Shown one piece after another: positions 35,084 to 61,184 of a DNA stretch of 64,000 nucleotides; position 1 is the first letter of the stretch; every line of letters starts with the position of its first letter. The DNA comes from Haliotis rufescens (Eukaryota): assembly GCF_023055435.1 (NCBI RefSeq), contig NW_025963802.1:26412001-26476000 (forward strand). The letters run 5' to 3'. A program made the translations under genes and the position numbers. The notes beneath the pieces were generated by a model that saw nothing but the letters and a program-made list of their open reading frames with translations, was not told where the DNA came from and searched no databases.

Positions 35084-35304
35084 TGTGGTAACCCCAGACT
35101 ACATACAATCATTTAATAAACAAGACAACCCGGTATTAGAGGGATAGTCAAGATGTACATGTATTTACTCTTCTTGAGTGTTTACATTCATGGCGGAAAC
35201 AGCCGTCGCGAGGGTTCCCAGAATTCCCTGCTAAGGGAGCAGTTATTATGCTTAAGTGGAAATCACGGGGAGTGGCTTATTGTTTAAACTGTTACTCTAT
35301 GACA
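35084..35304 (-). repeat. 3' LTR of the Mag-like element
   Basis: 221-bp direct repeat of 39859-40079, preceded on the minus strand by the polypurine tract. Confidence 0.96.
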
Positions 35305-35659
35305 CTCCTCCCCCATAGTTTTGTTGCACCTTAAACATAACTACCATAATGAATCTACACATGTTGAAAGAACTGACAATTGCTCCAGAAGATGTAAAGT
35401 GTCTCTTCACACATCTCATTGGAACATTTTAAATGAAATTTAACCAATATTGTTCCAGATGTTATTTAGAGTCTCTCATATCACACAATAACTGGAACAC
35501 TTTAACTGAATATGCACTTGCATTAATGATTAAAGATAACTGGATATGCATCTGCTTATGTCTGAATAAGGGAACCAATAACAAGATCCAAAACTATCAA
35601 TCACTGATGGTTCACTTAGGTGACAAATAGTGTGAAATACATCACATTCTCATTACAGT

Positions 35660-38566: not shown

Positions 38567-38582
38567 GTTCTCGCCATCACCT

Positions 38583-39758
38583 TCAAACCACTGTCAGCGG
38601 GAGAGTAGCGGACTGATTTCCATAATTTACTTGAACGTCTGTAGTGCCTACTATCGGTATTCTCTCTCTGTTGTAGGACCGAAGAATAGCATTGGTCTCA
38701 CTTAACTTGGGCCTGTCATCACCCTCCTTCCACACTGAATGGAAAGTACTTGAACTGATCACTGAAGTTGCTGCGCAAGTGTCTATCTCCATAGTTAGCT
38801 TTTTACCATTAACTAACACTTCAATGAGATAGGGCTCCACTCTGTGTCGCTTACCACTCAATCTGTTTTGAGCATGTTGAGTTTCTACCTTAAAAAGTCC
38901 ATATTCATTGTTCTCGTCTACCTGAGATACATCGTCAATACGATTAGCATGATTAGTGGAAGATCTGTTGTCCTTGTAATGGGTACCACGACCATGACAA
39001 CGGCCCCTGTCGCGACCACGACTGTGACCACGACCTGAAGATCTATCATTCATGGCGCTTCGAGAGCGACAAGCACGCTGGATATGACCAACCTTATTAC
39101 AGTTGTTACACACAGCGTTTTTGTAATAGCACTGACTACTGACATGATTTGAGCCCCCACAGCGATCACACTTCCTGCCTGCATTATTTCTCCTGTTAGC
39201 CTCTCTCATCTTGTGCACTGGCCTTGGCAACTGATCTCCCCCTTTAATATCATGCACTTCCTTAGCAGCCATTTCCATTCCTAAACACAAGGAGTAAGCC
39301 TTAGCAAAGTCCAATGTTTTCTCAGTTAACAGTCTTTTTTGCATTGCTTCATTGTTGATACCACACACTAGACGATCCCTTAACTGAGTCTCTAAATCAG
39401 TATATTCACATGTCGATGCCAAACGACGTAGCTCAGCCACATATGCCGATACAGTTTCATTAGGCTGTCTATCACGCATATTGTACCTTCTCCTTTCCAT
39501 CATAATAGTGGGTTTCGGGTGTAAATGTGACTTCATCAGGTGTACTAACGCATCATAAGAATGATCGCCAGGTTTCTGTGGCGTAGACAAGTTCCGTAAC
39601 TTGTATGACTTCGCACCAATCACACTCAACAGAATAGCACGCTTCCTACCCTGATCTGTAATTTCGTTTGCTTCGAAATAATGTCCAAGTCTCTCGACAT
39701 ATTCATTCCAGTCATCAGTCTGAGAATCATATTCATCTATTTTGCCGAAGGTAGCCAT
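38583..39758 (-). CDS. gag: Gag with two CCHC zinc knuckles plus the N-terminal part of the aspartic protease (Mag-like)
   Basis: DWNEYVERL..YFEAN N-terminus, LRDRLVCGI, CDRCGGSNHVSSQC, CNNCNKVGHIQRAC, protease site IDTCA. Confidence 0.93.
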   Translation of the reverse strand: MATFGKIDEYDSQTDDWNEYVERLGHYFEANEITDQGRKRAILLSVIGAKSYKLRNLSTPQKPGDHSYDALVHLMKSHLHPKPTIMMERRRYNMRDRQPNETVSAYVAELRRLASTCEYTDLETQLRDRLVCGINNEAMQKRLLTEKTLDFAKAYSLCLGMEMAAKEVHDIKGGDQLPRPVHKMREANRRNNAGRKCDRCGGSNHVSSQCYYKNAVCNNCNKVGHIQRACRSRSAMNDRSSGRGHSRGRDRGRCHGRGTHYKDNRSSTNHANRIDDVSQVDENNEYGLFKVETQHAQNRLSGKRHRVEPYLIEVLVNGKKLTMEIDTCAATSVISSSTFHSVWKEGDDRPKLSETNAILRSYNRERIPIVGTTDVQVNYGNQSATLPLTVV

Positions 39759-39842
39759 GTTGGTTTAAATACCGGGCGAACGCACGTGGTCTGACCAAGA
39801 TCGTTGTTACTACTCGCCGGCACGACAAACGCACTAAATTGA

Positions 39843-39853
39843 CCTCGTCGCCA
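39843..39853 (-). promoter_or_regulatory. Primer-binding site, complementary to the 3' end of tRNA-Ser(GCU)
   Basis: TGGCGACGAGG is the reverse complement of CCTCGTCG-CCA, the conserved metazoan tRNA-Ser(GCU) 3' end; it lies 5 nt from the LTR. Confidence 0.75.
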
Positions 39854-39858
39854 ATATA

Positions 39859-40079
39859 TGTGGTAACCCCAGACTACATACAATCATTTAATAAACAAGA
39901 CAACCCGGTATTAGAGGGATAGTCAAGATGTACATGTATTTACTCTTCTTGAGTGTTTACATTCATGGCGGAAACAGCCGTCGCGAGGGTTCCCAGAATT
40001 CCCTGCTAAGGGAGCAGTTATTATGCTTAAGTGGAAATCACGGGGAGTGGCTTATTGTTTAAACTGTTACTCTATGACA
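39859..40079 (-). repeat. 5' LTR of the Mag-like element
   Basis: 221-bp direct repeat, followed on the minus strand by the PBS. Confidence 0.96.
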
Positions 40080-41399
40080 CATGTATTCAGCCTCTCTGTT
40101 CTAATTTCAGATTAGGTGCTTTAGCTTGCTAAGAAGAGAAAAGTCTGGTCAATTGATAACCCTACATCCATGGTGTGGTCACAAGGGCAGGATCTTCTCT
40201 CATGGAATAAGGCCAGCGGAGCCGAGTGGGCTCGATAGCTCGATATCCCTGTAAAGACAGTGTATCTCTGTGAATCAGCATCATCTATACCAGCCATTGA
40301 AATAAATACTTTGAGCACTGATTAGTATGAAAATGTAATGTAATGACAAAGACAAGACAGTGATTGGATTACATGATTCATTAATTCTCTTCCGTTCAAC
40401 ATATGGAAACTCAGCTTGACACAATATTTTACCCTGGCATGAATCTAGTCAATAGTCTTCTGTTTCTACAGAATGTAGGTGTGGCACCTAAACAAAGTGT
40501 TTATTCACTTACACATGGCAGTGTTTTAGATTTACAAACAATTTAAACTGATACATGATATCAGCGAGGGATTACAGAAACATGGCATAAAGAAAAATAG
40601 ATTGAAAAGTGAAAATGTCTGCATTTTACTTTGTCTATGCCCAAACAGAGGAACAGTCCAACCGACATGAACACAGTTAACATCCACCTATTCATAAAAA
40701 AACCTTTTGAGCGCTCTATTCAAAACAAAATACAGCACACAGGGGATACAATATGTGTGACTGTCTGTGTTTTATTCATGCATTTTTAACCCTAAATAAC
40801 AATCAGTCCCAAGCAGGCACGCACACTGATGAATGAATGCCAAATGTGACATAAGGGAGACAACTCTTAACAGAACAGTATTCTGTCAACCATGGAATCA
40901 AGATATATAAAATCAGAAATTGACTGATTTTTTTCAAGAAAGAGTTTAAATTTCATTCCACCTTGAAAAAAACCCATGAGAAGCAATAACAAATTAATTT
41001 ATATGAATACAATGGCTACTTAAACACATAATAATTTCTTCAGAATTTTGGGAATATATATGTTAATATTAAAACAAACAGCATCAACATTTTGAAATAT
41101 CTTCTTATCCAAAAGAAGATATCTTTCTTTTTGGTAACATTTACATGGAATTAAATTTTAACAAAATAGTAAGAAGTAGATCATAACATTGCAACACCTC
41201 TTGTAGAACTGTGTACCAACACTCACAGGTGTGGCCGTTGCACATTAAAACAACCCACTGTAACCACAGCACCAATGAATGTCACAGGACCAAGGTCTCT
41301 TTCCGAACAAACATGTCTACATATGAGTCTAAAACCTATGTCATATCAATGAATCTTACACTAAAACTACCCCTGGTTAGAACATGTCTTCAGCAATCC

Positions 41400-45324: not shown

Positions 45325-46810
45325 CTAGAAATATTGATACCACCTGTTGTTTATTAAAGATAGCATTTTTCACAAATGTTTCCAGTCTAACCAAGAGGTC
45401 AATAGTACTTCTTTTTTTCTAAAACCACATTGAATATTTGTTAAAAGATTACTGGTTTCTAAATACCATATAAGTCTGCTATTTACCATTCTTTCCACGG
45501 TCTTGCAAATTCAGCTGGCAAGTGATATTGGTCTATAATTAGAAGGATCAGTATGATCCTGGCCAGGTTTTGGTATTGGAATTATGACAGCATTTCGCCA
45601 TGATGAAGGGAAATTCCCCGTTGTCCAGATATTATCAAACATACCGGTAGTTAACCTATGTCTCTAAACAGGAATCAGGTAAATGTTTAAGTAATTGATG
45701 ATGGATATTATTAGAACCTGTAGAAGCATCACGAGCTTGCCCAGAGGCGGTATGCAGCTCATGGTTGGAAAAGATTTCATCATAATCCTCACTATCAATT
45801 TTTCTGTTTTTTTAACTTTACAGTTTGGGGTATAATTTGATGAGGATGAATGTTTAGCTAAAGTTTCTCCCAATTTATTTGCTATATCAGATTTAGCAGT
45901 TGATAATGTACGTGTCACAATCCTTAAGATGGTGAACACCAGATTTAGAACCTTAACATTAATCCTTTGCACCATATTCCCAACCTTAGACATAGGTGTT
46001 CTGAAATCTACACAGTTTCGCCAAGATTGGTGTTTATTTTGTTTAAACATACGACAAGCTTTTGCATTTAAATTTTTAAAGTTATGACAGTTGGGTAGTG
46101 GCAAAAATATTTTTCTGCTTTTTTCCCTGGCTTGTTTACAATCAGTGTTGAACCATGGATTACGAACATGTGGATCAGTAGAAGATTTGGGAAAAAATTC
46201 ATCAGTAATTCCGTTTATAACTTCAGAAAAAAGCTGAATAGGACCAGCAACATTACTGAAACAATCAGGATTTATTTTGTTTGTGCATAATGTTTGAAAT
46301 AAAGGCCAGTTTGCCTTTGTAAAATTCCATCTTGTTGAAGGTGAGGTGAAATGGGGTTTAACGTCGCGTCCAAGATTATTGCACTTACATAGTGACGTGC
46401 ATGCACGTGTGTGTGTGGCTGCTTGTACTAGTCTGGACTGATGCCGATTTATAGTGCTAGCACACTGAGATACCACACCACAGTTTAACATGAATACCCC
46501 ACTCAGACACAGTATACTGACTCCAAGCCGAACAGTCCTTTTTTAGGCCCTTAATGCCGAGCGCCAGACTGGGTAACAACAAGTACCATCTTTAAACGTC
46601 TTTTGGTATGACGCGGCCGGGGATCGAACCCCGGACCTTCCGCTCTCCGGGCGGACGCTCTACTACTAGACCACGGAGGCGGTCCATCTTGTTGAAGGTG
46701 GAATATCAGATGGATTTATTGTTTTAATAATAGTTGAGAAATGGTCATTTCTACAAAGGTCATTGTGGACTGATCATTCAAATACATTGAGAAGGTTAGA
46801 ATCAGTTAGT
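45325..46810 (-). pseudogene. I-group (Nimb/I-like) LINE ORF2 relic, downstream part (end of endonuclease to start of RT)
   Basis: RWNFTKANW, NPWFNTDC, FPSSWRNAVIIPIPKPGQDHTDPSNYRPISL, RSTIDLLVRLETF; frameshifted; interrupted by a SINE at 46344-46683. Confidence 0.85.
46344..46683 (-). mobile_element. tRNA-derived SINE with a Meta-domain-like core, inserted in the LINE
   Basis: A box TGGTCTAGTAG, B box GGTTCGATCCC, core GTCATACCAAAAGAC..GATGGTAC. 17-bp TSD CCATCTTGTTGAAGGTG at 46327-46343 and 46684-46700. A second copy lies at about 56411-56764. Confidence 0.9.
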
Positions 46811-47755
46811 TATCATGGGATAACATTTATACTAAGTTATCTTATAATAATTAGATCTACATCAAGTGCTTTTATGAGTTATCATGGTGTAATATTTATA
46901 CATCATTTCATATAATTATAGTTTAAGTAATAAATATCATTAGGAAAAATGCATATATAAAATATCAGTAGTTTCAGTTAAAGCTTTTTTTAGATGGTTG
47001 CTAGCCTAAGGTAATGGGAGCGCATCTTCTAGACATACTATTCAATAAGACAAGAGTTACGTCTACATAGTTTAATTGATTTGAAGCTTTTAGATAAATG
47101 CTAGCCTAAGGTATCAAGATCCCATCTCCCAGACAAAGGATATTTATTTAAGTATATCTGTCATCACCTACCGGGGTATATTAGAATAACATTATTTCAA
47201 TTAAGACTCATTAAGGATTAGCCCCCATACAAGCTCATCTATAGTGCATTAAGGATTAGCCCCCATACAAGCTCGTCTATAGGGCATTAAGGATTAGCCC
47301 CCACACAAGCTCATCTATAGTGACACCCTAATCTCTTTCAAAGCATCCAGTAAATATGTCAACAAGATTAGTGCCAGTCCAACAGGATAAACAGGATTTA
47401 GTATTCCCCTCTGTCTAGCCATCCATTTAGCTTAGGACACAACCAATCGCGTATCAACCAATCACATTCCTTTCTATTGTTTAAATTTTTGTTAAATACA
47501 TACTGTAGGCAGGTTTTAGGCAGAGAAGGGGTTTGACCAACTTACCAAGCAGACCTCTCTCCCACAGCCCAGAGTGTTGTACCGACTCTCTGTGGCACCC
47601 TCAGTTATTATCTAAGTATATTGTAAATTGTTAATTGTTCTTGTAAATAAAATTGTGATTAGTCTCCTGTGACTCTGGCTCTTTGCTGACTAATTCCCCA
47701 AGAAAACCAGCACGTCATTTGGAAGGTATTGTTCACCCAGAACAGTTCCATGATA
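46811..47755 (+). repeat. 5' LTR (945 bp) containing three 38-bp tandem repeats at about 47209-47322
   Basis: Direct repeat of 54369-55313; CATTAAGGATTAGCCCCCA occurs three times; CCAATC motifs near 47444 and 47458; AATAAA near 47646. Confidence 0.95.
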
Positions 47756-47984
47756 ATTTGGCGGAGAATCATCGTTTTCGGAACCACAGAGTCCAGGAAC
47801 TAACTACGACCAGCTACAAGAACCCATTGGAGGACATGCCCAACCGTGATCATCTGATGGAATAACAAGCAAGCTGCATCTACCTCTGACCTCAACACTG
47901 GATTAAAGACAACCAACTCCTCCAAAGACACCAACAAAGGAAGAAAAAGTCTTCAAATATTGTAAGTAATACATTGTTGAATAC

Positions 47985-50900
47985 TTGTCATCCTTTAATT
48001 TAGTACAGTACATACTAATAGGTGTCATGGCAAATATGGAGTCTGGAATGGAAAGTAACTTTGAAAGTGAAATTCCAACAGTGTCTTTAGTTACGCCCCT
48101 TGCCAACAGTGTAATTCAGGCAAAATTTGGCACAAAAACAACAAATTGTTTAGTAGATACAGGGGCATCCATTTCTTGTATTTCGTCTGCTTTTCTTAGC
48201 ACAGCTTTTGAAAACCTTACTCTTGGAAACTCACCCTTTCCACAGGTTAAAGGTGTTGGCGGCGAATTGCATAAAGTGTTAGGTTCAGTTGTGTTAGATT
48301 TTGTCATTGAGGATCAGGAATTTTCTCAAAGATTCCACATTCTGCCTACACTTCCAGAGGCAGTGATACTAGGTGAAAACTTCCTTGATGACAATGATGC
48401 AGTCTTAGATTATAGCTGTCATTCCTTGATACTTAACAACAGCACCTCAGACAGGCAATATATCAATTTCATAGCCAATTCAGTACAAGAGATTAGTGGA
48501 TTAGCAAAAACAATAGATCAGATTTACATCCCCCCTCAGAGTGAAATTCATTTCAAGGTTAGACTATCAGAGACCAAAGAGGACTCTCTCATCCTCATTG
48601 AACCCATTGCTTCCCTCACTGCTCATTCTGAAGTAGCAGGTGGTAGAACTCTTTCCAAAGTGAAAAGCAAAACTGCTACATTTAGGCTTATGAATCCCTC
48701 CCAAGAAGAAAAGGTTCTTGACAAGGGTACAGTTGTAGGCAAATTTAGTTACATAGAACAGGGCTCTGTTTATGAAATCGACTCTGACCAACCATTCATC
48801 AGTACCGTTCACACCACTGAGAAGAGAGCCAATGACACCAGGGATTACGTTAAAATTGCACAAGAATTAGGATTTGATTTGACCAATACACAACTGACTC
48901 CAGACCAACGACACAGACTACTTAGATTTTTGGGACAAAATAGAAACATGTTTTCAACGAGTCTTGCAGATTTAGGTAAGACTGACATGCACCAACATAT
49001 CATTGACACTGGCAACCACCAACCCGTTAAGAGTAGACCATATCGTCAATCTCCTCATCTCCAAAAAGTCACTGAAGAACTTATAGATGATTTTCTGAAG
49101 TATGATTTGATCGAGGAATCTACTTCTATGTATTCAGCTCCAATTATCCTAGTCAAAAAACGCGATGGCTCATATAGATTTGTTTGTGACTACAGAAAGT
49201 TGAATTCTGTCACTTTACCAATGTCTTGGCCTCTTCCTGTTTTTGATGATGTTATTGATAACATCGCAAATGCACATGCTAAGATCTTCTCAACTTTAGA
49301 CCTTGCTAATGGCTTCTTCCAAGTGCCATTACATGAAGATTCAAAGCATAAAACTGCTTTCGTCACCCATCAAGGCCTTTATCAATTCAAACGATTGCCC
49401 CAAGGTTTGACTAATTCTCCACTTTGTTTTCAACAGCTCATGAGCAAAGTGCTACGAAAATTGCTTTTTAAGGTTGCGCTGATATACATTGATGATTTGA
49501 TAATTTACAGCCAAAACTTTGAAGAGCATCTCCAACATTTGGAGCAAGTATTTTACTATCTGAAACAGGCAAAATTAACACTAAAGCCATCCAAATGCAA
49601 TTTTGCAACGGACAAAGTTTCTTTTCTGGGTCATGTTTTATCATGTGGAGGTGTTCAAGTTGATGACAAAAAGATTGAAGCAATTAGAACCTTTCCAGTG
49701 CCCAAGTCACAAAAGCAGATTCGCTCCTTCTTAGGTCTCACGAACTTCTACAGGAAGTATGTGAAAAATTACGCTCACATAGCGCTACCACTGAATGCCT
49801 TGCTAAAGAAGCATTCGGAGGCAGAACTAGGAAAGAAACCAAAGTTCCAATGGTCACTTGAGTGTGATCAGGCATTCAACACACTCAAACATGCTATGAG
49901 TAATACACCTGTTCTGGCGTATCCAAATTTTGACAAAGAATTTCTTCTTGCAACTGATGCCAGTGATATGAGCATAGGTTTTGTTTTGAGTCAAAAAGAC
50001 GAGAAAAATAATGAACATCCAATAGCTTTTGGTGGTAGAGCTCTTCATGGCAGCGAAAAGAACTGGAGCATTACAGAAAAGGAAGGCTTAGCTCTAGTTG
50101 AAGCCATTAGATCCTTTCGTCCATACCTTGCAAATTCCAAATTCACAGTCTACACTGATCATATAGCATTGAAGTGGCTGAAATCCATCAAGGATGCCAC
50201 AGGTAGGTTAGGACGATGGTCTTTGGAACTTTCTACCTACACTTTTGACATTGTTCACCGCAGCGGCAAAGCCAATGGGAATGCTGATGCTCTGTCACGT
50301 AGGGAATATGAGGAAAATATTAACTGTAATGATCAGACAGAAGAAGATGCTGAGAAAACAGTCTTCTCAGTAACTTCAACTCAGCAAAGCAAATCAACTA
50401 GCAATACAATCTTGCCAAACACCCATTCATCCACACAGGTCACACAGACAACTCAGACTGAGGATATTTGCACACCTATTGTCAATCACTTAGAATCAGA
50501 CACACAGAAAACACATTGGTCAGCCACCTTTGAATATGAAGAGGATTATCAGTCAGTACCAGTTAATGTTGTCGCAGCATTACATGCTTCAAATGCTGAT
50601 GTTACCCAAGACACATTGGTTGAAGTAAGTATAAAAGAACATCCAAATTTACGTCACCTACAAAGGATTTGTCCAGATTTCATCCAAATCTTTGACTACA
50701 AAGAGGATGAAGTCCTTCCACAAAATGAAAAGGATCGTCAAAAGATTCTTATTGAAGCCAATACTTTTGAAATTGATGAAGGCATCCTATACCGATTTGT
50801 TCCACAAAGACAGAAAGGCCACGCAGACAAGTTCATTAAACAGCTGGCAGTCCCAAGAACCCTCAGAAATCAAGTCCTGCAATCCTATCATGACTCAGAG

Positions 50901-53198
50901 TTTGGCGGTTGCCACCATGGGAAAGAAAGGATGCACAACACCATGAGACCTAAGTACTACTGGCCCAAAATGTACAGCGATATTGCTACTTATGTCCAGA
51001 CATGTGAGGTATGTCAACAGACCAAGAGGCACTACCATGGCAAGAAGGCACCACTTCGTCCACTACCTGTAGAAGAGGTCTTCACCCGATGGCACATTGA
51101 CATTCTCGGTCCCCTGCCAACAACACCAGATAAGTACAAGTACATTTTGGTCATCACAGATGCATCATCTAGATGGTGTGAAGCCTTTCCACTTCGGACC
51201 CAAGAAGCCAAAGAGGTAGCAGATGTTTTCGTCAGAGAAATAATTTGTCGTTATGGCGCTCCAAGGACCTTAATTTCAGACAGAGGTCAGAATTTCATGT
51301 CCAAACTTATCAAAGCAATTTGTGAACTTTTGGCAATTAAATTTACCCATACCAGCCCATACCATCCTCAAACAAACAGCTGTGTAGAAAGGCTCAACTC
51401 TTACATCAATCAATCACTAAGAGCCTATTGTAACAAGTCTCAAAATGATTGGCCCCGTTTTATTCCTGGCATCATGATGGCCTATCGGATGGCTCCAAAT
51501 TCATCAACTCAAAAATCCCCATATGTTATGCTTTTCGGCCGGGAAATGAGAGCTCCACAAGATGTAGCATTAATTCCAAAAGAAAATTTAGGCCACAATA
51601 ACAAAAGTTATCTTTCCAATTTGCTTGAGGAGCTTGAAATCACTAGAACAATCGCAGCTGAAAACACTGCTCGGGCTAAGGAGGTGTATTCAGAACAATA
51701 TAATAGAAAGGCTAAAGAACCAGAATTCGCCCCAGGTCAAAGAGTTTGGCTTTACTGTCAAAAAGTTGAAAAAGGCCTTTCCAACAAATTAACCAAAAAG
51801 TGGTATGGTAGCTATTATATCATCCATACAGGTCCAAATTATACCTACAAACTGCGCCGATGTTCTGACGACAAAATTCACAAACCACTGGTCCATGCCA
51901 ACCGTCTGAAGCCATATTTTGATCCTGCTGATCGTCCACAGTATCCTCCAGAACCATACCTCAATAACCCCAGTAACATAGATTCAGGAGTCATGGATGA
52001 CAACGAGGAACCAGTCAATGATACTCATCTTGACAGCAACAATTCCCCACCAACAAGTTCAACTTACCAGGCAACTGATCAATCACCTCCACAACAGAAA
52101 GGTAAGAAGGTCAATTCCAAAACAAAGGCAGGTACTTCCAGCAACAAGAGTCAGAAGCAAAAAACCCCAACAAAGAAGAAAAACCCTGCTTCAAGTACAA
52201 CAGAAAAACCTACCAGTCCCACGGCAACCATGAAGGAAAATCATGCCACACCAGGTCCTAGTGCTCCAACCAAGGTAAATGAAAAGGTAAATAAAGGGAA
52301 AAGAGGAGTGAATAGTAAGCATCACCAGCCCAAATCCAGAAAACAACCCGACGACAGCCAGGTACAACCTCCAAGTCCAACATCAGGTAATCAAACCAAG
52401 GACATCCCTCAGGTCTTCAATCCAGAGGACATCCACTCAATTGTTAGTTCCAAGAGAGCAAATGGCAAAATCTACTACAGAGTGAAATGGAAGGATCCAG
52501 AAAGAGGAAACACATGGGAGTATGGCAGCAGCATTCCAGACTCCATTCGGAGAGAATTTCACCTCAAAAGAAGTATGTCAGGAAAACGACGAAAACGTCC
52601 ACTGAAGAATCATAAGTTTTTCGACCAAAAGGATTCAGCACAAGACAATAAATCAGTCAATGTTCTGTCAGGGAATACAATGTCAGGGAATGTCCAGCAA
52701 GAGAACACCAAACCATGCATAGAATTAGACGTCAAACCATATCCAATTTTTCCAAAACACCTTCGAAATGTAGATCATGAAATAGAAAGAGTAATGGGCA
52801 TTGAAATTATTCAAGGAGACTGCTATGTCAAGGTCTCATATGGAGATGATCATCATGATTACCAAACACGCTATTTTGAAAGTGTTCCTCTCCACCTCAT
52901 ACAGCGCTACCTTGATGATAGCTGGAAGGATCTTTCTAAGTGGCCCGTTAAAGTAGACAGTTGTCCATATGATCCGACTGAACTACCAATCTATAAATCC
53001 AAAAGGGTTATTTTTCCACATGGGGACTTGGGAAACATCGACAGGTTTTACTACCGTGCTACAAGCATACACTATAGACCCAGTTCACCATTTTATGATC
53101 AACTCCCCATATATGTTTGTGAATGCCAATTGAAAATATTCCTGTGCAAAATACAAAATCTCCTAAATAAACGGTGCAAATCACGAAACAGTTATTAG
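47985..53198 (+). CDS. pol: Pol polyprotein PR-RT-RNase H-IN-chromodomain with a C-terminal extension (first ATG at 48027)
   Basis: LVDTGA, ILGENFL, YSAPIILVKK, LDLANGFFQ, LPQG, YIDD, TDASD..EKE..TDH..ADALSR, H..H..C..C, HIDILGP/ISDRG/VERLN, YYRVKWK..TWE; no internal stop codons. Confidence 0.96.
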   Translation: MSSFNLVQYILIGVMANMESGMESNFESEIPTVSLVTPLANSVIQAKFGTKTTNCLVDTGASISCISSAFLSTAFENLTLGNSPFPQVKGVGGELHKVLGSVVLDFVIEDQEFSQRFHILPTLPEAVILGENFLDDNDAVLDYSCHSLILNNSTSDRQYINFIANSVQEISGLAKTIDQIYIPPQSEIHFKVRLSETKEDSLILIEPIASLTAHSEVAGGRTLSKVKSKTATFRLMNPSQEEKVLDKGTVVGKFSYIEQGSVYEIDSDQPFISTVHTTEKRANDTRDYVKIAQELGFDLTNTQLTPDQRHRLLRFLGQNRNMFSTSLADLGKTDMHQHIIDTGNHQPVKSRPYRQSPHLQKVTEELIDDFLKYDLIEESTSMYSAPIILVKKRDGSYRFVCDYRKLNSVTLPMSWPLPVFDDVIDNIANAHAKIFSTLDLANGFFQVPLHEDSKHKTAFVTHQGLYQFKRLPQGLTNSPLCFQQLMSKVLRKLLFKVALIYIDDLIIYSQNFEEHLQHLEQVFYYLKQAKLTLKPSKCNFATDKVSFLGHVLSCGGVQVDDKKIEAIRTFPVPKSQKQIRSFLGLTNFYRKYVKNYAHIALPLNALLKKHSEAELGKKPKFQWSLECDQAFNTLKHAMSNTPVLAYPNFDKEFLLATDASDMSIGFVLSQKDEKNNEHPIAFGGRALHGSEKNWSITEKEGLALVEAIRSFRPYLANSKFTVYTDHIALKWLKSIKDATGRLGRWSLELSTYTFDIVHRSGKANGNADALSRREYEENINCNDQTEEDAEKTVFSVTSTQQSKSTSNTILPNTHSSTQVTQTTQTEDICTPIVNHLESDTQKTHWSATFEYEEDYQSVPVNVVAALHASNADVTQDTLVEVSIKEHPNLRHLQRICPDFIQIFDYKEDEVLPQNEKDRQKILIEANTFEIDEGILYRFVPQRQKGHADKFIKQLAVPRTLRNQVLQSYHDSEFGGCHHGKERMHNTMRPKYYWPKMYSDIATYVQTCEVCQQTKRHYHGKKAPLRPLPVEEVFTRWHIDILGPLPTTPDKYKYILVITDASSRWCEAFPLRTQEAKEVADVFVREIICRYGAPRTLISDRGQNFMSKLIKAICELLAIKFTHTSPYHPQTNSCVERLNSYINQSLRAYCNKSQNDWPRFIPGIMMAYRMAPNSSTQKSPYVMLFGREMRAPQDVALIPKENLGHNNKSYLSNLLEELEITRTIAAENTARAKEVYSEQYNRKAKEPEFAPGQRVWLYCQKVEKGLSNKLTKKWYGSYYIIHTGPNYTYKLRRCSDDKIHKPLVHANRLKPYFDPADRPQYPPEPYLNNPSNIDSGVMDDNEEPVNDTHLDSNNSPPTSSTYQATDQSPPQQKGKKVNSKTKAGTSSNKSQKQKTPTKKKNPASSTTEKPTSPTATMKENHATPGPSAPTKVNEKVNKGKRGVNSKHHQPKSRKQPDDSQVQPPSPTSGNQTKDIPQVFNPEDIHSIVSSKRANGKIYYRVKWKDPERGNTWEYGSSIPDSIRREFHLKRSMSGKRRKRPLKNHKFFDQKDSAQDNKSVNVLSGNTMSGNVQQENTKPCIELDVKPYPIFPKHLRNVDHEIERVMGIEIIQGDCYVKVSYGDDHHDYQTRYFESVPLHLIQRYLDDSWKDLSKWPVKVDSCPYDPTELPIYKSKRVIFPHGDLGNIDRFYYRATSIHYRPSSPFYDQLPIYVCECQLKIFLCKIQNLLNKRCKSRNSY

Positions 53199-53337
53199 CT
53201 GTATCTTGTTATGTTTTCTTGTGTCCAGTCTTTTCACTATGGGTCGCCAGTTGAGAACAAATGGCATCAGCCTGATCATCTGAGTTATTTGTATCACAAC
53301 AAATTTTGAGCATTGACCTGATCAACCAATCTCAAAA

Positions 53338-53740
53338 ACCAAGCGAAACGAACCGAAACCGAAACCGTACCAAAACGAACCGAAACCGTAACAAAACGAA
53401 TCAAACCGTACGGCAAATCAAACCGAATTGAAACGAACCGTATCACGAAAATGAAGTGAACCAAACCAAACCATACCGTGAATCGAAACGAAACGAACCT
53501 TATGGTGAATTAAATGAAATGAACCAAACCAAAGCAACCGATACTGCGAATCGTACCGAAGCAAATCAAACTATATAGCAAACCGAATGAAACCGAACTA
53601 CATTGCATTGAACCGAATTGAACTGAACGAAAATCGAAACGAAGCAAAGCGAAACAAACCAAATTAAAATAAACCAAACCTAACAAATTGACATGAACCA
53701 AAACAAAAAAAAGGCAAACCAAATAGTTACGAAAACTAAC
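53338..53740. repeat. Low-complexity AAC(C/G)/CGAA pentamer-like tract in the 3' UTR of the element
   Basis: Repeated AAACG/AACCG/AAACC units. Confidence 0.8.
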
Positions 53741-54368
53741 AAAGAATTCTAAAAAGGATATACACCTTTTGTATACCGTATTAGCGTAATAAACCAATGC
53801 ACTTGTTATATGCACATGCACATAGATGCATATATAATGCGTCTAATGATTGTATCCAAAAATAGAAGGATATTACTATTTTTCATGATATACTTTTGTA
53901 ATTTGCCGCCAATACATCTTCCTGGTCATGACACCGTTTAGTAATATTTATGTACCGATCTTTTACATCATAATTATCATATTTGTTTTATTTTCTAGTT
54001 ATTACAGACAAACTGAGAAAGTATTTATATATGACATAGTATTTGAACATGCTAACTCTCTTTTCTTTGTTTCCATGTAAAACCTCCATGGACACAGCCT
54101 ACTATCTTACAACCCCAATCCAGGATGTGGAACTCAAGGCCTCCTTCATCACCCATAAAACTACCAATACAGACTGCCCAGACAAGCCAGCTCCACATCC
54201 AGAATCCCTGATGACAGCATTTTTATATTATGTTTCCTTATATCAAAGAGACTCTATAATAATTATTATTCACTACTACCAGTTTAACTTTATACATTGT
54301 CCATCTAAGCCTTAATTATTTTTTTTTTACACGTTTGGGGTCCAAACTTTTTCAGACGGAGGGGAAGT

Positions 54369-55313
54369 TATCATGGGATAACATTTATACTAAGTTATCT
54401 TATAATAATTAGATCTACATCAAGTGCTTTTATGAGTTATCATGGTGTAATATTTATACATCATTTCATATAATTATAGTTTAAGTAATAAATATCATTA
54501 GGAAAAATGCATATATAAAATATCAGTAGTTTCAGTTAAAGCTTTTTTTAGATGGTTGCTAGCCTAAGGTAATGGGAGCGCATCTTCTAGACATACTATT
54601 CAATAAGACAAGAGTTACGTCTACATAGTTTAATTGATTTGAAGCTTTTAGATAAATGCTAGCCTAAGGTATCAAGATCCCATCTCCCAGACAAAGGATA
54701 TTTATTTAAGTATATCTGTCATCACCTACCGGGGTATATTAGAATAACATTATTTCAATTAAGACTCATTAAGGATTAGCCCCCATACAAGCTCATCTAT
54801 AGTGCATTAAGGATTAGCCCCCATACAAGCTCGTCTATAGGGCATTAAGGATTAGCCCCCACACAAGCTCATCTATAGTGACACCCTAATCTCTTTCAAA
54901 GCATCCAGTAAATATGTCAACAAGATTAGTGCCAGTCCAACAGGATAAACAGGATTTAGTATTCCCCTCTGTCTAGCCATCCATTTAGCTTAGGACACAA
55001 CCAATCGCGTATCAACCAATCACATTCCTTTCTATTGTTTAAATTTTTGTTAAATACATACTGTAGGCAGGTTTTAGGCAGAGAAGGGGTTTGACCAACT
55101 TACCAAGCAGACCTCTCTCCCACAGCCCAGAGTGTTGTACCGACTCTCTGTGGCACCCTCAGTTATTATCTAAGTATATTGTAAATTGTTAATTGTTCTT
55201 GTAAATAAAATTGTGATTAGTCTCCTGTGACTCTGGCTCTTTGCTGACTAATTCCCCAAGAAAACCAGCACGTCATTTGGAAGGTATTGTTCACCCAGAA
55301 CAGTTCCATGATA
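54369..55313 (+). repeat. 3' LTR (945 bp)
   Basis: Direct repeat of 46811-47755. Confidence 0.95.
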
Positions 55314-55840
55314 AGTGACAAATCCAGAGAAGAGTAGGTCCCAGTTGTAAGATACTGATAAGTGCTTGAGTCATCATTAAATATACATAGGCCATTATTG
55401 AAATCTTCAAGTGCTTTACCTTAATACATAGTGTTTGTGTTTTTACCTGCCCAGAGTGGGTTTTGGCCATTTAGATCACCTATGATTATACAAGGTTTGG
55501 GGAGTTGATCATTGAGAGCTTGAAGATCAGTCAGCTGAAGAGCTGGAAGAAGGCGGAATATACAGTGAGAACAAATTAAAAACGACGTTCAAAGTAAGTC
55601 AAACTGCAACGGCTTGTAGATTGGTGTTAAGTATAACAGGGCTGTGGATAACATCATTCTTAACAATGACTGAAGATCCTCCAGTGGCCCTTTCACCCAT
55701 AGGAAAAATAATGATATGCATTAAACTGATGTAAGTTAAAAATATCTGTCTGCTTTAGATACGTTTTCTGAAATCCTGAACTAAGAGCTGTAAATTGTTA
55801 ATATTACTTCTCAGTCCTCTACAATTCCATTGTACTATGT
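55314..55840 (-). pseudogene. I-group LINE ORF2 relic, upstream part (AP endonuclease)
   Basis: IVQWNCRGLRSN, IIGDLNGQNPLW, TYSSLDLS; the reading frame continues across the LTR insertion into LTDSNLLNVFE at 46810. Confidence 0.85.
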
Positions 55841-56410
55841 GTAGAAGCTATCTCTTCGGAGGAATGACGGGAGATCTACCCCTCACCTTCCTTGAAGGCA
55901 ACAAGCTGTGTGTCCTATGATGACGTTGATCACTGTTGTCAGTCACCTTCATATATTAAAATTCAAAATACATCACGCACACGAAACGTTTTGAATTCTG
56001 TTGGAAATTCCCTCCTCTGTGATATCATCCACTGTCATTTTAGACAAAGCAAAATTTCCGTGTGTTTAGAAATCTGAATATCGGATATTTAGTCGAAGGA
56101 TTGAATTTCAAAAATAGCATATTATAGTGATCACGGAAATCTGGAACCTGGAATCGTTTAGAATGTTTTGGAAATTAGCAAACATGAACGCTGAAGTGCA
56201 TTTTCCGCCATATTGGATAGTGCTAACAAAATCACATTTCATGTATGCGGGTTATCAGACACCTATTAAATCACGTACATTTCAAACTCAGCTGCTATAC
56301 ATGCATCCCTGAATTTCTCATACATTTTGGAACCAAATGACAAATGGTCTTAGTCACAAAAACAAATTATCGAGATGGCATCAAGCGAAATAAATTAGGT
56401 GTGCAAACGA

Positions 56411-56764
56411 GGTGAGGTGAAATGGGGTTTAACGTCGCGTCCAAGATTATTGCACTTATATAGCGACATGCATGCACGTGTATGTGTGTGTGTGTGGCTG
56501 CTTGTACTAGTCCAGACTAATAGCGATTTATAGTGCTAGCACACTGAGATACCATGCCGCAGGTTAACATGAATACCCCACTCAGACACAGTATACTGAC
56601 TCCGAGCCAACTAGTCCTTGTTTTAGCCCCTTAATGCTGAGCGCCTGCCAGGGTAACAACAAGTACCATCTTTTAACGTCTTTTGGTATGACGCGGCTGA
56701 GGATTGAACCCCGGACCTTCCGCTCTCCGGGCAGATGCTCTACCATTAGACCACGGAGGCGGTC
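56411..56764 (-). mobile_element. tRNA-derived SINE, second copy of the 46344-46683 family
   Basis: Colinear high similarity along the full length; flanked by GGTGAGG repeats. Confidence 0.88.
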
Positions 56765-57769: not shown

Positions 57770-58417
57770 CACAAAATGCCTTTCTTGTATAACACATGAC
57801 CTCAGCATGATGGAGCATGATGTAGCCCATGGGCAGATTCTGCATCAACACAATGCCCTGTAGTATAACATATGACATCAGCATGATGTAGCCCATGGGC
57901 AGATTCTACATCAACACGATGCCCTGCATGTATAACACATGACCTCAGCATGATGGAGCCCATGGGCAGATTCTACATCAACACAATGCCCTGCATGTAT
58001 AACACATGACCTCAGCATGATGGAGCCCATGGGCAGATTCTACATCAACACAATGCCCTGCATGTATAACACATGACCTCAGCATGATGTAGCCAATGGG
58101 CAGATTCTACATCAACACGATGCCCTGCATGTATAACACATGACCTCAGCATGATGGAGCCCATGGGCAGTTTCTACATCAACACAATGCCCTGCATGTA
58201 TAACACATGACCTCAGCATGATGTAGCCAATGGGCAGATTCTACATCAACACAATGCCCTGCATGTATAACACATGACCTCAGCATGATGGAGCCAATGG
58301 GCAGATTCTACATCAACACAATGCCCTGCATGTATAACACATGACCTCAGCATGATGGAGCCCATGGGCAGATTTTACATCAACACAATGCCCTGCATGT
58401 ATAACACATGACCTCAG
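57770..58417. repeat. Tandem repeat, 67-bp unit, about 9-10 copies
   Basis: Unit GTATAACACATGACCTCAGCATGATGGAGCCCATGGGCAGATTCTACATCAACACAATGCCCTGCAT. Confidence 0.95.
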
Positions 58418-59350
58418 TTCAAAGGCAGTCAGTCCATCTACCCAGTACCCTTCATGTATAGTGTAAAATACATACAACAATGAATCCATATAGACCATAT
58501 ATTAAACCACATACCTACCCCAAGAAGTACTGTTTTAGAAGCACACCACCATGTAGGGCTGAGTTTTAACCGTGCCTTGCTTCTCTAATTGCAGATGGTG
58601 ATATTTATATATAATAGAAGGCAGTGACCTTACTACCAGTGGTACATCCAGTTGCCTCCCAGCAGGCTGTCACTGCACACTACACATACAGATTACTGAG
58701 AATCACGGAGTCTGAATAAGCATGACAGATTCTGTGGCAAAAGACATTTACATGTAAATATGAAACGATAATAGAAACATTATTCACTTGCATTTTCCTG
58801 ACTCCTGCTTGTGAATGTGTGTTCCAATGTGTGACAAGCCTGGGCTAAGCCTCCTTACTCTGTCATTACAGGAGATTTGTGGGGCTTTCCAATCAAATAA
58901 TATTTGACCTGAACAACTTCAACTAAAATCATGGTTATGTTATGAAACCCATTCTGCCATATTCTTATTGCTTGATTAACTCAGAAATGTTCAAATGATT
59001 TAGGCATCATGTAATGAAAACATAAATAGTCACCTTGAAGAATGAGTACAAACACATGACCAAGGCAAAGCTCTCAACTATTGTGACTATTTGCATCTCA
59101 AGAACAGCATCTCAGTCTCAAGTACAACAATGGCATTAAATTCTTGACTTGTGTTACAGAGAAGTTCATTTATATCTATTTTTATGTGTAGTCTCTTTTC
59201 TCAAAGAGAAGTCAAAACTTTTCCAAAAATACTTAACAATGAGATTCCTCCATACCAGTTAAGATCTGACATCTGACTTGATTTGAAAAGAAGTAAAACC
59301 ATCCAGACTTTCTGTGGTCAGGAGATATAGCAGTAACCAATATTACATTG

Positions 59351-60243
59351 AACAAGAGTATAGTCGACGAAGTCATCTATATCCCCCGCCCATTTTAACA
59401 CGTTATGGTCCCAAACCAGGTAACTGACCAAACATTTCTCTTAGGCCATGTCAAAATAGCTGCAATGGAAATTCTAAAAGAAACATTAATAAAATTCCTA
59501 AATATCAAATCGCACCAGTTCAGTATGTGCTTTATATATAGACATGCAATATTTGACAAGGAAATATTTAACAGTTTTTGAGTTATGCTCCGGAAACGAA
59601 CACCACCCTTATAGAACCTAAGTCCAACTTGTTGCCATGGAAACGTAAAACATTAATTTTTTATAAAACTCCTAAATAGCAAAAGGCACCAGTTCAGTAT
59701 GTGTCGGGTAAACATGCAAAGTTTTGTAAGAAATTATTTAACGGTTTTTGTGTTACGCTCCGGAAACGAACAGCACCCTTATAGAACCTAAGTCCAACTT
59801 GTTGCCATGGAAACGTAAAAAATAAAAACTTATAAAATTCCAAAATAGCAAAAGGCACCAGTTCAGTATGTGCCTAGTAGACATGCAAAGTTTTGTAAGA
59901 AAGTATTAAATGGTTTTTGAGTTACGCTCCGGAAACGAACGCTCCGGAAATGAACAGCACCCTTATAGAACCTAAGTCCAACTTGTTGCCATGGAAACGT
60001 AAAAAATATAAATTTATAAAATTCCTAAATAGCAAAAGGTACCAGTTCAGCATGAGTCTGATAGACATGCAAAGTTTGTAGAGAAATATTTAACGTTTTC
60101 TGAGTTATGCTCCGGAAACAATTTTGGGACGCACACGCACACATGCACGCACACACGCACACATGCACGCACACACGCACACACGCACACATGCACACAC
60201 GGACGGAACCCATTTCTATATCCTCCGCCAACATTGTTGGCGA
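59351..60243 (-). mobile_element. Second Helentron-associated (HINE-like) element with about 4 copies of a roughly 170-bp core
   Basis: ATATCCCCCGCC subterminal motif as in 3531-4968, GCTCCGGAAAC-marked repeats at 59587, 59757, 59927 and 60109, a CA/CG microsatellite at 60128-60207, and a CGCCAACA-T-TGTTGGCG hairpin. Confidence 0.72.
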
Positions 60244-61184
60244 CGCAAAAACGGTAGAACAACAGGGCCGATGATCTCGTCACGGTAGCGCTGTCCATTG
60301 AGATTTCCCTCTACCATTATCAAACGGGTCCTCTGTCTCGCTGAAATCCCACCCAATACAATAACGCTGCCGCCCCCGAACCGATCTTCTTCCATGACAC
60401 AATGATTGACGAAACGTTCACCTCGATGTCGGTACGCTCGAATCCGACCATCCCTGTGGCTGAGGTGCAAATGAGACTCGTCAGTAAATAGAACTTGTCC
60501 CCACTGCATGGCTGTCCAGCGTAGATGCTGTCTGCACCACTGTAGACGTGCTTGACGGTGGTTTCCTGTCAAAATTGGACGTCTGACGGGTCTTCTTGTG
60601 ACAATCCAGCGACGACGTACGGTTTGTGAAGATATTCGTTGAAGGCTAGGGATGCTTCTTGCAGTCACTGTTGCTGGCTGGAATCGATTTCATAGGTGTG
60701 TTGTTCAAATCCAGTTGTCTTTTCGATTATTGGTTATGTGTGGCCTGCCACTCCGAGGATGGTCTATGACTGCATTCGTCTGGTGTTTCTGTTGACGTTA
60801 AATTGTCTTGCAACATCACGTTGACTCGTTCCTGCTTGAAGCATACCATTGGCTTGCAGACGCTCATTTTCAGACAGGCATGGCATTTCGTAATGTTGAA
60901 TAATTGTGTAATTTTGTTGTTTTTCTGAGTGGTTGTTGTCAGCACGATGATAAACAATGCATATGGAATCCCGTTAGTGCACGTTTTTATCCCCATTCTT
61001 GGGGAGTTGAATGCATCGGGCTTGCATAAAAGTCAACTTTTGCATGGAATGCATGCTTTTCTGTAGCAGTTGCATTTTTGTGACTTGATTCCATACATGT
61101 ACTACAATGTTGAAAACCAAACTTTACTTGTTTGAAAAATACACTAAAATATTGGTGTCACAGGAACTTTTGTTGTTGAGTATA
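60244..61184 (-). mobile_element. 5' half of a Tc1/mariner transposon (frameshifted transposase starting at ATG 60886)
   Basis: MPCLSENERLQANGMLQAGTSQRDVARQFNV HTH, VLFTDES, GGGSVIVLGGIS, GNLNGQRYRDEI; truncated before the second Asp. A TA-flanked TIR-like end lies near 61156-61184. Confidence 0.85.

What the first reader, a model, noticed from the sequence alone, without database searches (positions are those of the whole stretch)
46811..55313. Young Gypsy element with an intact Pol but no gag: possible Pol-only or bipartite retrotransposon family
Seen: the two 945-bp LTRs look identical and the 5.2-kb ORF is uninterrupted with all catalytic motifs. Only about 270 bp separate the 5' LTR from a well-placed ATG (GTCATGG, 48027), and the protease DTG follows about 43 codons later. 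No capsid or CCHC ORF is visible upstream, downstream (53200-54360) or antisense. Established: Ty3/Gypsy replication needs Gag, and typical non-autonomous derivatives lose pol rather than gag. Inference: this copy moved recently using Gag supplied in trans. Pol has its own start codon, which suggests a stable architecture (e.g. a gag-only partner sharing the LTR) rather than a random deletion.
Basis: partly seen in the sequence, partly recalled or inferred. Interest (0 to 1): 0.85.

Follow-up and report, generated by a model that had tools for sequence, protein, structure and literature searches.

The report
Gag-less but Pol-intact young Gypsy element
This is a very recently inserted Gypsy-type retrotransposon that keeps a complete enzyme gene (Pol) but has no coat-protein gene (gag), so it must borrow Gag from another element; that lifestyle is documented in plants (Tos17, BARE2), and I found no report of it in animals.

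Summary
Two 945-bp LTRs (46811-47755, 54369-55313) are 100% identical. A 270-bp leader with stops in all frames precedes an ATG at 48027. A 1723-codon ORF then encodes PR-RT-RNaseH-IN-chromodomain with its catalytic motifs. No gag or CCHC exists in any frame, by ORF listing, Pfam, tblastn with 14 relatives' Gags, or profile comparison.

The insertion is genuine. It splits the endonuclease domain of a decayed LINE, whose frame closes across a 3-bp duplication (AGT).

Relatives at 37-44% Pol identity carry gag directly upstream of pol and an F-type env, so this copy has lost gag and has no env. A tight subfamily (81-57% identity) shares a family-specific C-terminal extension. The 66% relative starts with the same five residues (MANME).

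Best reading: a Pol-competent, Gag-dependent element, like Tos17 or BARE2 in plants.

Whether the whole family is gag-less, or has a gag-only partner, could not be tested.

I rate it a new variant of a known kind, of moderate interest.

The parts
46808..46810 (+). Left copy of the 3-bp target-site duplication (AGT)
   Evidence: The same AGT lies at 55314-55316. The minus-strand LINE frame reads ..DLS|LTD.. in frame once the element and one AGT are removed.
46811..47755 (+). 5' LTR, 945 bp, ends TATCATGG...CCATGATA. It holds a 38-bp x3 tandem repeat at 47209-47322 and an AATAAA at 47646-47651.
   Evidence: 100% identical to 54369-55313; tandem repeat; sequence read. The poly(A)-signal role of AATAAA is inferred.
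47759..47770 (+). PBS-like TGGCGGAGAATC, 3 nt after the LTR
   Evidence: Sequence read. The matching tRNA was not identified, and the window holds no tRNA gene.
47756..48026 (+). Leader without coding capacity. It has stops in all three frames, two short uORF ATGs (47836, 47857), and an intron-like GTAAGT (47964) ... ACTAATAG (ends 48022).
   Evidence: The intron reading is inference only.
48027..53198 (+). Pol ORF, 1723 codons plus stop, with ATG in the context GTCATGG. Domains: PR 48117-48389, RT 49152-49637, RNase H 49851-50240, IN zinc finger 50850-51029, IN core 51078-51368, SH3 51735-51917.
   Evidence: Translation, Pfam, motifs, 579 homologues.
52431..52541 (+). Chromodomain C-terminal to the integrase, followed by a basic GKRRKRP..KFF motif conserved across the clade
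   Evidence: Pfam Chromo E=0.002-0.02, below the gathering score. 37 weak PDB chromodomain sequence hits. Confident beta-beta-beta-alpha fold in the AF2 single-sequence model. Motif conservation.
52644..53195 (+). Subfamily-specific C-terminal extension (residues 1540-1723). It contains a second chromo-like beta-beta-beta-alpha module at about 52764-52943.
   Evidence: Only P0001, P0121 and P0122/P0128 share it among 1.84 billion representatives. AF2 pLDDT is 71-82 over the module. Foldseek's best hits are tandem chromodomains, HP1 and chromoshadow domains, all weak (E >= 0.05), with no capsid.
53199..54354 (+). Non-coding 3' internal region with no env ORF. It includes a degenerate AACCGAAAC-type repeat at about 53330-53700.
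   Evidence: Three-frame translation is full of stops; TRF output; ORFs there have no Pfam hit.
54355..54367 (+). Polypurine tract GACGGAGGGGAAG
   Evidence: Sequence read.
54369..55313 (+). 3' LTR
55314..55316 (+). Right copy of the target-site duplication (AGT)
55316..55588 (-). Host context, right flank: endonuclease domain of a decayed LINE interrupted by the element
   Evidence: Pfam Exo_endo_phos_2 E=2.5e-4 on 55424-55588(-); frame analysis.
45667..46809 (-). Host context, left flank: continuation of the same LINE ORF (end of the endonuclease domain, ..DLCRNDHF.., and the region after it), itself interrupted by a SINE-like insert at 46339-46684
   Evidence: The motif reading is from my general knowledge of LINE endonucleases; no Pfam hit was obtained for these pieces.

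Best explanation
The element is a gag-less and env-less derivative of the chromodomain-bearing Ty3/gypsy clade of marine invertebrates, whose full members are gag-pol-env elements.

Shown: it was reverse-transcribed and integrated as an LTR-leader-pol-LTR unit very recently. The LTRs are identical and the 3-bp TSD is clean. It encodes a complete PR-RT-RNaseH-IN-chromodomain polyprotein from its own AUG.

Inferred: because it has no capsid or nucleocapsid gene, its RNA must be packaged and reverse-transcribed inside particles built from Gag of a related autonomous element in the same cell. It brings its own cis signals (PBS, PPT, LTR ends) and probably its own enzymes. It would thus be a 'Gag parasite' of the Tos17/RN304 or BARE2 type.

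Also inferred: in this subfamily Pol became translatable without Gag (own AUG, conserved MANME start). Its gag-bearing relatives instead make Gag-Pol by reading through an in-frame UAG. Independent translation is what would let a gag-less form persist rather than be a dead end.
For: The structure and the absence of gag come.

The gag profile (8 Gags of relatives) compared with the Pol family profile, which includes full-length P0001, gives hhalign probability 0.2%.

Bona fide integration: the flanks are the two halves of a LINE endonuclease domain, and the frame is restored with a 3-bp TSD.

Ancestral state: L006 and L009 (42% Pol identity) have gag (PF03732, CCHC) ending in UAG, directly in frame with pol. 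L004 and L009 also have a Baculo_F-type env. The tree nests the window element, with P0001, P0128 and P0126 (support 100), among these gag-bearing elements.

Lineage-level signal: P0001 (66% identity, also an intact 1730-aa ORF) starts with the same MANME. P0003, P0126 and P0127 start within 3 residues of it. The ATG has a purine at -3 and G at +4.

Precedent: Tos17 and RN304 lack gag without any remnant, and Tos17 is active (PMC3977881). BARE2 cannot make Gag, is packaged into BARE1 VLPs and outnumbers BARE1 (PMC3735527).
Against: No second copy of this family could be examined. A one-off deletion therefore cannot be excluded.

Proteins in the database start at the first ATG after a stop, by gene-caller convention. 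Pol proteins of the wider clade likewise begin with a Met shortly before the protease, and the in-frame ORFs of gag-bearing L009 and L006 have their first Met 12 and 48 codons after the gag stop. A shared start is thus weaker evidence than it looks.

No candidate Gag donor was identified. The only gag in the window belongs to an unrelated element.

Two uORF ATGs precede the pol ATG.

A 3-bp TSD is, to my knowledge, shorter than the 4-6 bp usual for Ty3/gypsy.
Confidence: 0.5

Rival explanations
1. One-off deletion derivative. A normal gag-pol(-env) parent lost gag either by template switching during the very reverse transcription that produced this copy, or by a deletion soon after integration. 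The copy is then a dead end and there is no gag-less family.
For: Internal deletions are common among LTR-retrotransposon copies (general knowledge). The nearest relatives with known context all have gag. Only one copy could be seen. The in-frame TAA 62 codons before DTG lies at about the same distance as the gag stop in L009 (52 codons) and L006 (71 codons), so a deletion ending just upstream of the old gag stop would give this picture.
Against: The deletion would have to remove all of gag without remnant and leave a Kozak-good ATG. The 66%-identical P0001 shares the identical first five residues. With 949 bp of identical LTR sequence, little time was available for a post-integration deletion.
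Confidence: 0.3
2. One reading: a stable bipartite system, with this Pol-only element paired with a gag-only element carrying the same LTR, PBS and leader.
For: Gag-only LTR elements exist in plants (TR-GAG, PMC4350172). Pol has its own conserved start. There are no gag remnants.
Against: No LTR-gag-LTR partner, or any other copy of the LTR or leader, exists in the 64-kb window or in the 70 fetched loci. No such pair is documented for Ty3/gypsy in the papers searched. A related autonomous element as donor explains the data as well and is simpler.
Confidence: 0.1
3. Retrocopy of a spliced pol mRNA. The parent family expresses Pol from a subgenomic RNA in which gag is removed as an intron (as foamy viruses do, from my general knowledge). 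One such RNA, still carrying R-U5-PBS and PPT-U3-R, was reverse-transcribed and integrated.
For: This would explain in one step both the clean loss of gag and a Pol with its own conserved AUG. Splice-signal-like motifs exist in the leader (GTAAGT at 47964, ACTAATAG ending at 48022). Env-carrying relatives presumably use a leader splice donor for env mRNA (general knowledge of retrovirus-like elements).
Against: The nearest gag-bearing relatives use in-frame UAG readthrough, not splicing. The candidate donor is still present, so it was not the one used. There are no transcript data and no parent element to define an exon junction.
Confidence: 0.07
4. Assembly artefact: gag was dropped by a collapse or chimeric join inside the element.
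For: The window is repeat-rich and has two N runs.
Against: The N runs are at 23.8 and 33.6 kb, far from the element. The outer junctions are consistent (TSD, LINE frame). The leader-to-pol stretch is unique sequence with no repeat that would favour a collapse.
Confidence: 0.03
5. Pol itself supplies the structural function: the subfamily-specific C-terminal extension, or another Pol region, acts as a capsid or nucleocapsid substitute.
For: The 184-residue extension is confined to this subfamily and is conserved in it.
Against: The predicted fold of its confident part is chromo-like. Foldseek returns only weak chromodomain, chromoshadow and HP1 matches and no capsid. There is no Pfam or PDB sequence hit to Gag, no CCHC, and the gag profile against the Pol profile gives probability 0.2%.
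Confidence: 0.02

Closest known systems
Tos17 and RN304 (rice, Ty1/copia)
   Same: Pol ORF intact, gag completely absent without remnants, and LTR/PBS/PPT intact. Tos17 is demonstrably mobile and is inferred to use the Gag of a related autonomous element, Lullaby (PMC3977881).
   Different: They belong to a different superfamily (Copia, with IN before RT) and a different kingdom. Here the element is Ty3/gypsy of an invertebrate, derives from an env-carrying clade, and its Pol ends in chromo-like modules. Mobility here is inferred only from identical LTRs.
BARE2 (barley, Ty1/copia)
   Same: It cannot make its own Gag, is packaged into the VLPs of its autonomous relative BARE1, and is evolutionarily successful. 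Its pol is thought to be translated from a downstream AUG (PMC3735527).
   Different: BARE2 keeps the gag sequence and lost only the start codon. Here the gag sequence is gone altogether.
Chromodomain-carrying 'ancient errantiviruses' of Cnidaria, Mollusca and Annelida (PMC13524379)
   Same: Pol domain order with a chromodomain after the integrase. The relatives fetched here (L004, L009) have gag, pol and an F-type (Baculo_F) env, as that paper describes.
   Different: This copy has neither gag nor env. It also has an extra C-terminal extension found only in its own subfamily.
TR-GAG elements (plants)
   Same: They show that LTR elements carrying only one half of the coding capacity can persist (PMC4350172).
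   Different: They are the mirror image: gag only, with no pol.
LARD / TRIM non-autonomous LTR elements
   Same: They depend on proteins supplied in trans.
   Different: They encode nothing, whereas this element encodes a full Pol.

Membership tests
Ty3/gypsy (Metaviridae) LTR retrotransposon | Two LTRs, a PBS after the 5' LTR, and a PPT before the 3' LTR | tested here: met
Ty3/gypsy (Metaviridae) LTR retrotransposon | Pol domain order PR-RT-RNaseH-IN | tested here: met
   Pfam positions; 579 Ty3/gypsy-type homologues.
Ty3/gypsy (Metaviridae) LTR retrotransposon | A gag gene upstream of pol | tested here: not met
   The element is therefore a defective or non-autonomous derivative, not a complete member.
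Ty3/gypsy (Metaviridae) LTR retrotransposon | Target-site duplication of 4-6 bp | tested here: not met
   Only 3 bp (AGT) are duplicated. The LINE frame supports exactly 3 bp.
Chromovirus-like elements (chromodomain after the integrase) | Chromodomain C-terminal to the integrase | tested here: met
   Pfam Chromo is below the gathering score (E 0.002-0.02). It is backed by 37 weak PDB chromodomain hits and a confident chromo fold.
Chromovirus-like elements (chromodomain after the integrase) | Phylogenetic placement inside the Chromovirus genus | not tested
   No reference chromoviruses were included in the tree. PMC13524379 places the invertebrate chromodomain clade basal to chromoviruses.
Errantivirus-like (env-carrying Ty3/gypsy) | A third ORF encoding an envelope protein | tested here: not met
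   53199-54354 has no ORF. Relatives L004 and L009 do have a Baculo_F env.
Gag-deficient, Pol-competent non-autonomous LTR elements (Tos17/RN304, BARE2 type) | Intact pol ORF together with intact cis elements | tested here: met
Gag-deficient, Pol-competent non-autonomous LTR elements (Tos17/RN304, BARE2 type) | No translatable gag | tested here: met
Gag-deficient, Pol-competent non-autonomous LTR elements (Tos17/RN304, BARE2 type) | Mobilised in trans by the Gag of an identified autonomous partner, with several independent copies | not testable with these tools
Only identical LTRs and a clean TSD speak for recent mobility.
   None in the window or in the fetched loci. The genome was not searchable.

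The most novel reading that the evidence does not exclude
A long-lived, multi-species lineage of Pol-only Ty3/gypsy elements in molluscs that lost gag (and env), evolved independent translation of Pol from its own AUG, and gained a tandem chromo-like targeting tail. It would persist as an obligate parasite of, or in a split partnership with, a Gag-encoding element.
Probability: 0.3. Interest if true: 0.7.

Novelty: new variant of a known kind. Interest (0 to 1): 0.45.

Why it matters
If gag-less copies of this family are numerous and old, it would show that the 'Gag parasite' strategy known from plant Copia elements also arose in animal Ty3/gypsy and errantivirus-like elements. It would also show that Pol can be uncoupled from Gag-Pol readthrough. 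It would give a natural system for asking which RNA signals let a foreign Gag package a genome. It would also warn annotators that 'intact' LTR elements scored by Pol domains alone may not be autonomous. If it is a single deletion copy, it is an ordinary by-product of retrotransposition.

Tried and rejected

2. The search for related loci with the single Pol in genome contigs and viral contigs found nothing.

3. I considered the contig length of P0001 (6763 bp, against 6.6 kb for a gag-less interior). I rejected it as real evidence, because Logan contigs of the other relatives in the same list, whose gag status I could not check, are also often only 0.4-1.9 kb longer than their ORF.

4. The neighbouring complete Gypsy (35084-40080) as Gag donor is rejected. 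It shows 33% Pol identity, no nucleotide similarity in LTR or leader, and a different PBS.

5. A hidden gag was sought in the LTR, leader, 3' region, antisense strand and Pol C-terminus. Nothing was found.

6. The capsid-fold idea for the C-terminal extension finds no support: the model is chromo-like, and only weak chromodomain matches appear. The single-sequence model of that part was poor.

7. An N-terminal fragment search found only one more internal fragment, P0129.

8. Rfam and tRNA scans of the window found nothing, so the primer tRNA was not identified.

9. Literature searches for 'gag-less' retrotransposons or bivalve cases found no animal precedent.

10. dN/dS could not be computed because no DNA of any close relative was available.

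The N runs were left untouched.

Full report
**1. What is there**

Self-comparison of the window shows one perfect direct repeat, 46808-47756 = 54366-55314 (949 bp, 100%).
- Reading the ends gives LTRs of 945 bp, 46811-47755 and 54369-55313, with inverted ends TATCATGG...CCATGATA.
- A purine tract lies at 54355-54367.
- A PBS-like TGGCGGAGAATC lies at 47759-47770.

Between the LTRs lie three stretches:
- a leader of about 270 bp (47756-48026) with stops in all three frames and two tiny uORFs;
- one ORF from ATG 48027 to the stop at 53196-53198 (1723 codons);
- 1.16 kb of non-coding DNA containing a degenerate short-period repeat.

Pfam places the Pol domains as follows:

| Domain | Residues |
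|---|---|
| Protease | 31-121 |
| Reverse transcriptase | 376-537 |
| RNase H | 609-738 |
| Integrase zinc finger | 942-1001 |
| Integrase core | 1018-1114 |
| SH3 | 1237-1297 |
| Chromodomain (weak) | 1469-1505 |

DTGA sits at residue 44, YIDD at 487, and the HHCC motif is in place. The integrase D,D,E residues sit at conserved columns.

**2. Is gag really absent?**

Yes, as far as sequence can tell.
- The ten other ORFs of 60 aa or more in the element have no gag-like Pfam match.
- No CCHC pattern exists in any of the six frames.
- tblastn with 14 Gag proteins finds nothing better than chance between 46 and 56 kb. The same search lights up the gag of that other element at 38.6-39.8 kb.
- A profile of eight relatives' Gags, compared with a profile that includes the full-length closest Pol, gives hhalign probability 0.2%.

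**3. Is it a real insertion?**

The flanks are the two halves of the endonuclease domain of a decayed LINE on the minus strand.
- The right flank matches Pfam Exo_endo_phos_2 (E = 2.5e-4).
- The left flank continues with the end-of-domain motif (..DLCRNDHF..). That motif reading rests on my own knowledge of LINE endonucleases.

If the element and one copy of AGT are taken out, the LINE frame runs on as ..DLS|LTD... The element therefore integrated as one LTR-pol-LTR unit with a 3-bp duplication (46808-46810 and 55314-55316). Three base pairs is shorter than I would expect for Ty3/gypsy. The neighbouring Gypsy in the window has a perfect 5-bp ACATG.

The two N runs of the window are 13 kb or more away and were left alone.

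**4. What it descends from**

The Pol has hundreds of relatives, and the named ones come from bivalves and other invertebrates.

DNA of relatives was obtainable only from animal contigs that contaminate bacterial MAGs.
- L006 and L009 (42% Pol identity) have a gag (PF03732, zinc knuckles) that ends in UAG. Pol follows directly in the same frame, 52-71 codons before the protease D[TS]G.
- L004 and L009 also carry a Baculo_F-type env.

This fits the chromodomain-carrying 'ancient errantivirus' clade reported from Cnidaria, Mollusca and Annelida (PMC13524379).

A quick maximum-likelihood tree (the careful search did not finish) puts the window element in a fully supported group with P0001, P0128 and P0126, on a long branch. 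This group is sister to P0008 and nested among those gag-bearing elements. Loss of gag, and absence of env, are therefore derived states.

**5. The subfamily**

The members and their identity to the window Pol are:

| Protein | Length / type | Identity to window Pol |
|---|---|---|
| P0128 | fragment | 81% over 574 columns |
| P0001 | 1730 aa, intact ORF | 66-69% |
| P0003 / P0126 | 1019 / 1320 aa | 57-59% |
| P0121, P0122, P0129 | fragments | 39-69% over the aligned part |

- P0001 begins with the same five residues, MANME, while the next dozen residues differ.
- P0003, P0126 and P0127, from three contigs, all begin within three residues of that point.
- The last 184 residues of Pol have homologues only in this subfamily, among 1.84 billion representatives.
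- With a four-sequence alignment, AlphaFold gives pLDDT 71-82 for a beta-beta-beta-alpha module there.
- Foldseek's best PDB hits are tandem chromodomains, HP1 and chromoshadow domains. All are weak (E >= 0.05), and none is a capsid.

I read the Pol tail as chromodomain + basic linker + second chromo-like module, that is, a targeting tail rather than a Gag substitute.

**6. How it most likely works**

Shown: a gag-less unit was reverse-transcribed and integrated recently.

Inferred:
- Its RNA was packaged by Gag from another element, most plausibly a gag-bearing relative with compatible packaging signals.
- Its own Pol is translated from the AUG at 48027.

Gag-bearing relatives make Pol only as a readthrough Gag-Pol fusion. 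An independent AUG that is conserved in a 66%-identical relative is therefore what one would expect if the lineage had adapted to life without its own gag.

This is the lifestyle described for two plant cases:
- Tos17/RN304: gag absent without remnant, and Tos17 active, with Lullaby as presumed donor (PMC3977881).
- BARE2: no Gag made, packaged in BARE1 particles, and more abundant than BARE1 (PMC3735527).

**7. What remains open**

I could not look at a second copy.
- The collection scans did not return the close relatives.
- The host genome is not among the tools.

The shared start codon is suggestive, not decisive. Database proteins begin at the first ATG after a stop by convention. Pol proteins of the wider clade likewise begin with a Met shortly before the protease, and the in-frame ORFs of gag-bearing L009 and L006 have their first Met 12 and 48 codons after the gag stop.

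A single deletion that happened to end near the old gag stop remains a serious rival (0.3). The in-frame TAA here lies 62 codons before DTG, within the range seen in relatives.

The only gag in the window belongs to an unrelated 5-kb Gypsy.

A retrocopy of a spliced pol mRNA would explain the clean loss neatly but has no direct support. Misassembly and a cryptic Gag function are unlikely.

**8. Verdict**

| Item | Verdict |
|---|---|
| Observation | confirmed |
| Novelty | new variant of a known kind: a gag-deficient, Pol-competent LTR element, here in an invertebrate Ty3/gypsy lineage derived from env-carrying elements and with an unusual double chromo-like tail |
| Interest | 0.45, rising to about 0.7 if a genome census shows an old, multi-copy or multi-species gag-less lineage |

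Noticed in passing
window 35084-40080 (-): A second, complete 5-kb Ty3/gypsy. It has 222-bp LTRs that are 100% identical, a 5-bp TSD (ACATG), a gag(CCHC)+protease ORF at 38583-39758 and an RT-RNaseH-IN ORF at 35660-38566. It is unrelated to the gag-less element (33% Pol identity, no shared DNA).
   Followed up: partly
window 45667-46809 (-) and 55316-56100 (-): A decayed LINE (endonuclease domain and the region after it) on the minus strand, with internal stops. It is split by the Gypsy insertion and by a SINE-like insert.
   Followed up: partly
window 46339-46684 and 56410-56764: Two ~350-bp repeats, 90% identical. On the minus strand they show tRNA-like A/B-box motifs, so they are probably tRNA-derived SINEs. 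The left one seems to have duplicated ~15 bp of the LINE (..PSTRW.. appears twice). There is no Rfam hit at gathering score.
   Followed up: partly
window 47964-48022: Intron-like signals in the leader: GTAAGT, then a branch-point-like ACTAAT and AG, ending 4 nt before the pol ATG. This could be a relic of the splice donor for env mRNA, or chance.
   Followed up: no
window 47209-47322 (and 54767-54880): Three tandem copies of a 38-bp unit in the upstream part of each LTR, possibly enhancer-like repeats.
   Followed up: no
window 53330-53700: A degenerate AACCGAAAC-type short-period repeat fills the place where relatives carry env.
   Followed up: no
window 3617-29244 and 57814-60119: Many satellite arrays, with periods of roughly 20, 21, 35, 65, 67, 70 and 156 bp, and strong strand skews. 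They make up much of the first half of the window.
   Followed up: no
window 60216-60668 (-): A fragment of a Tc1/mariner-type transposase (weak hits to HTH_Tnp_Tc3_2 and DDE_3).
   Followed up: no
loci L004-L070 (GTDB 'bacterial' MAGs: Sedimenticola TCF1, Rubritalea, Stappiaceae, Nitrospirales and others): Dozens of contigs filed under bacterial MAGs encode animal-type Ty3/gypsy gag-pol(-env) elements. These are host DNA contaminating symbiont or environmental bins.
   Followed up: partly
L009 4744-5883, L006 1285-2403: In the nearest gag-bearing relatives, gag ends in UAG followed by G, and pol continues in the same frame. This suggests stop-codon readthrough rather than frameshifting. More distant relatives (L008, L017) have overlapping -1 frames.
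   Followed up: partly
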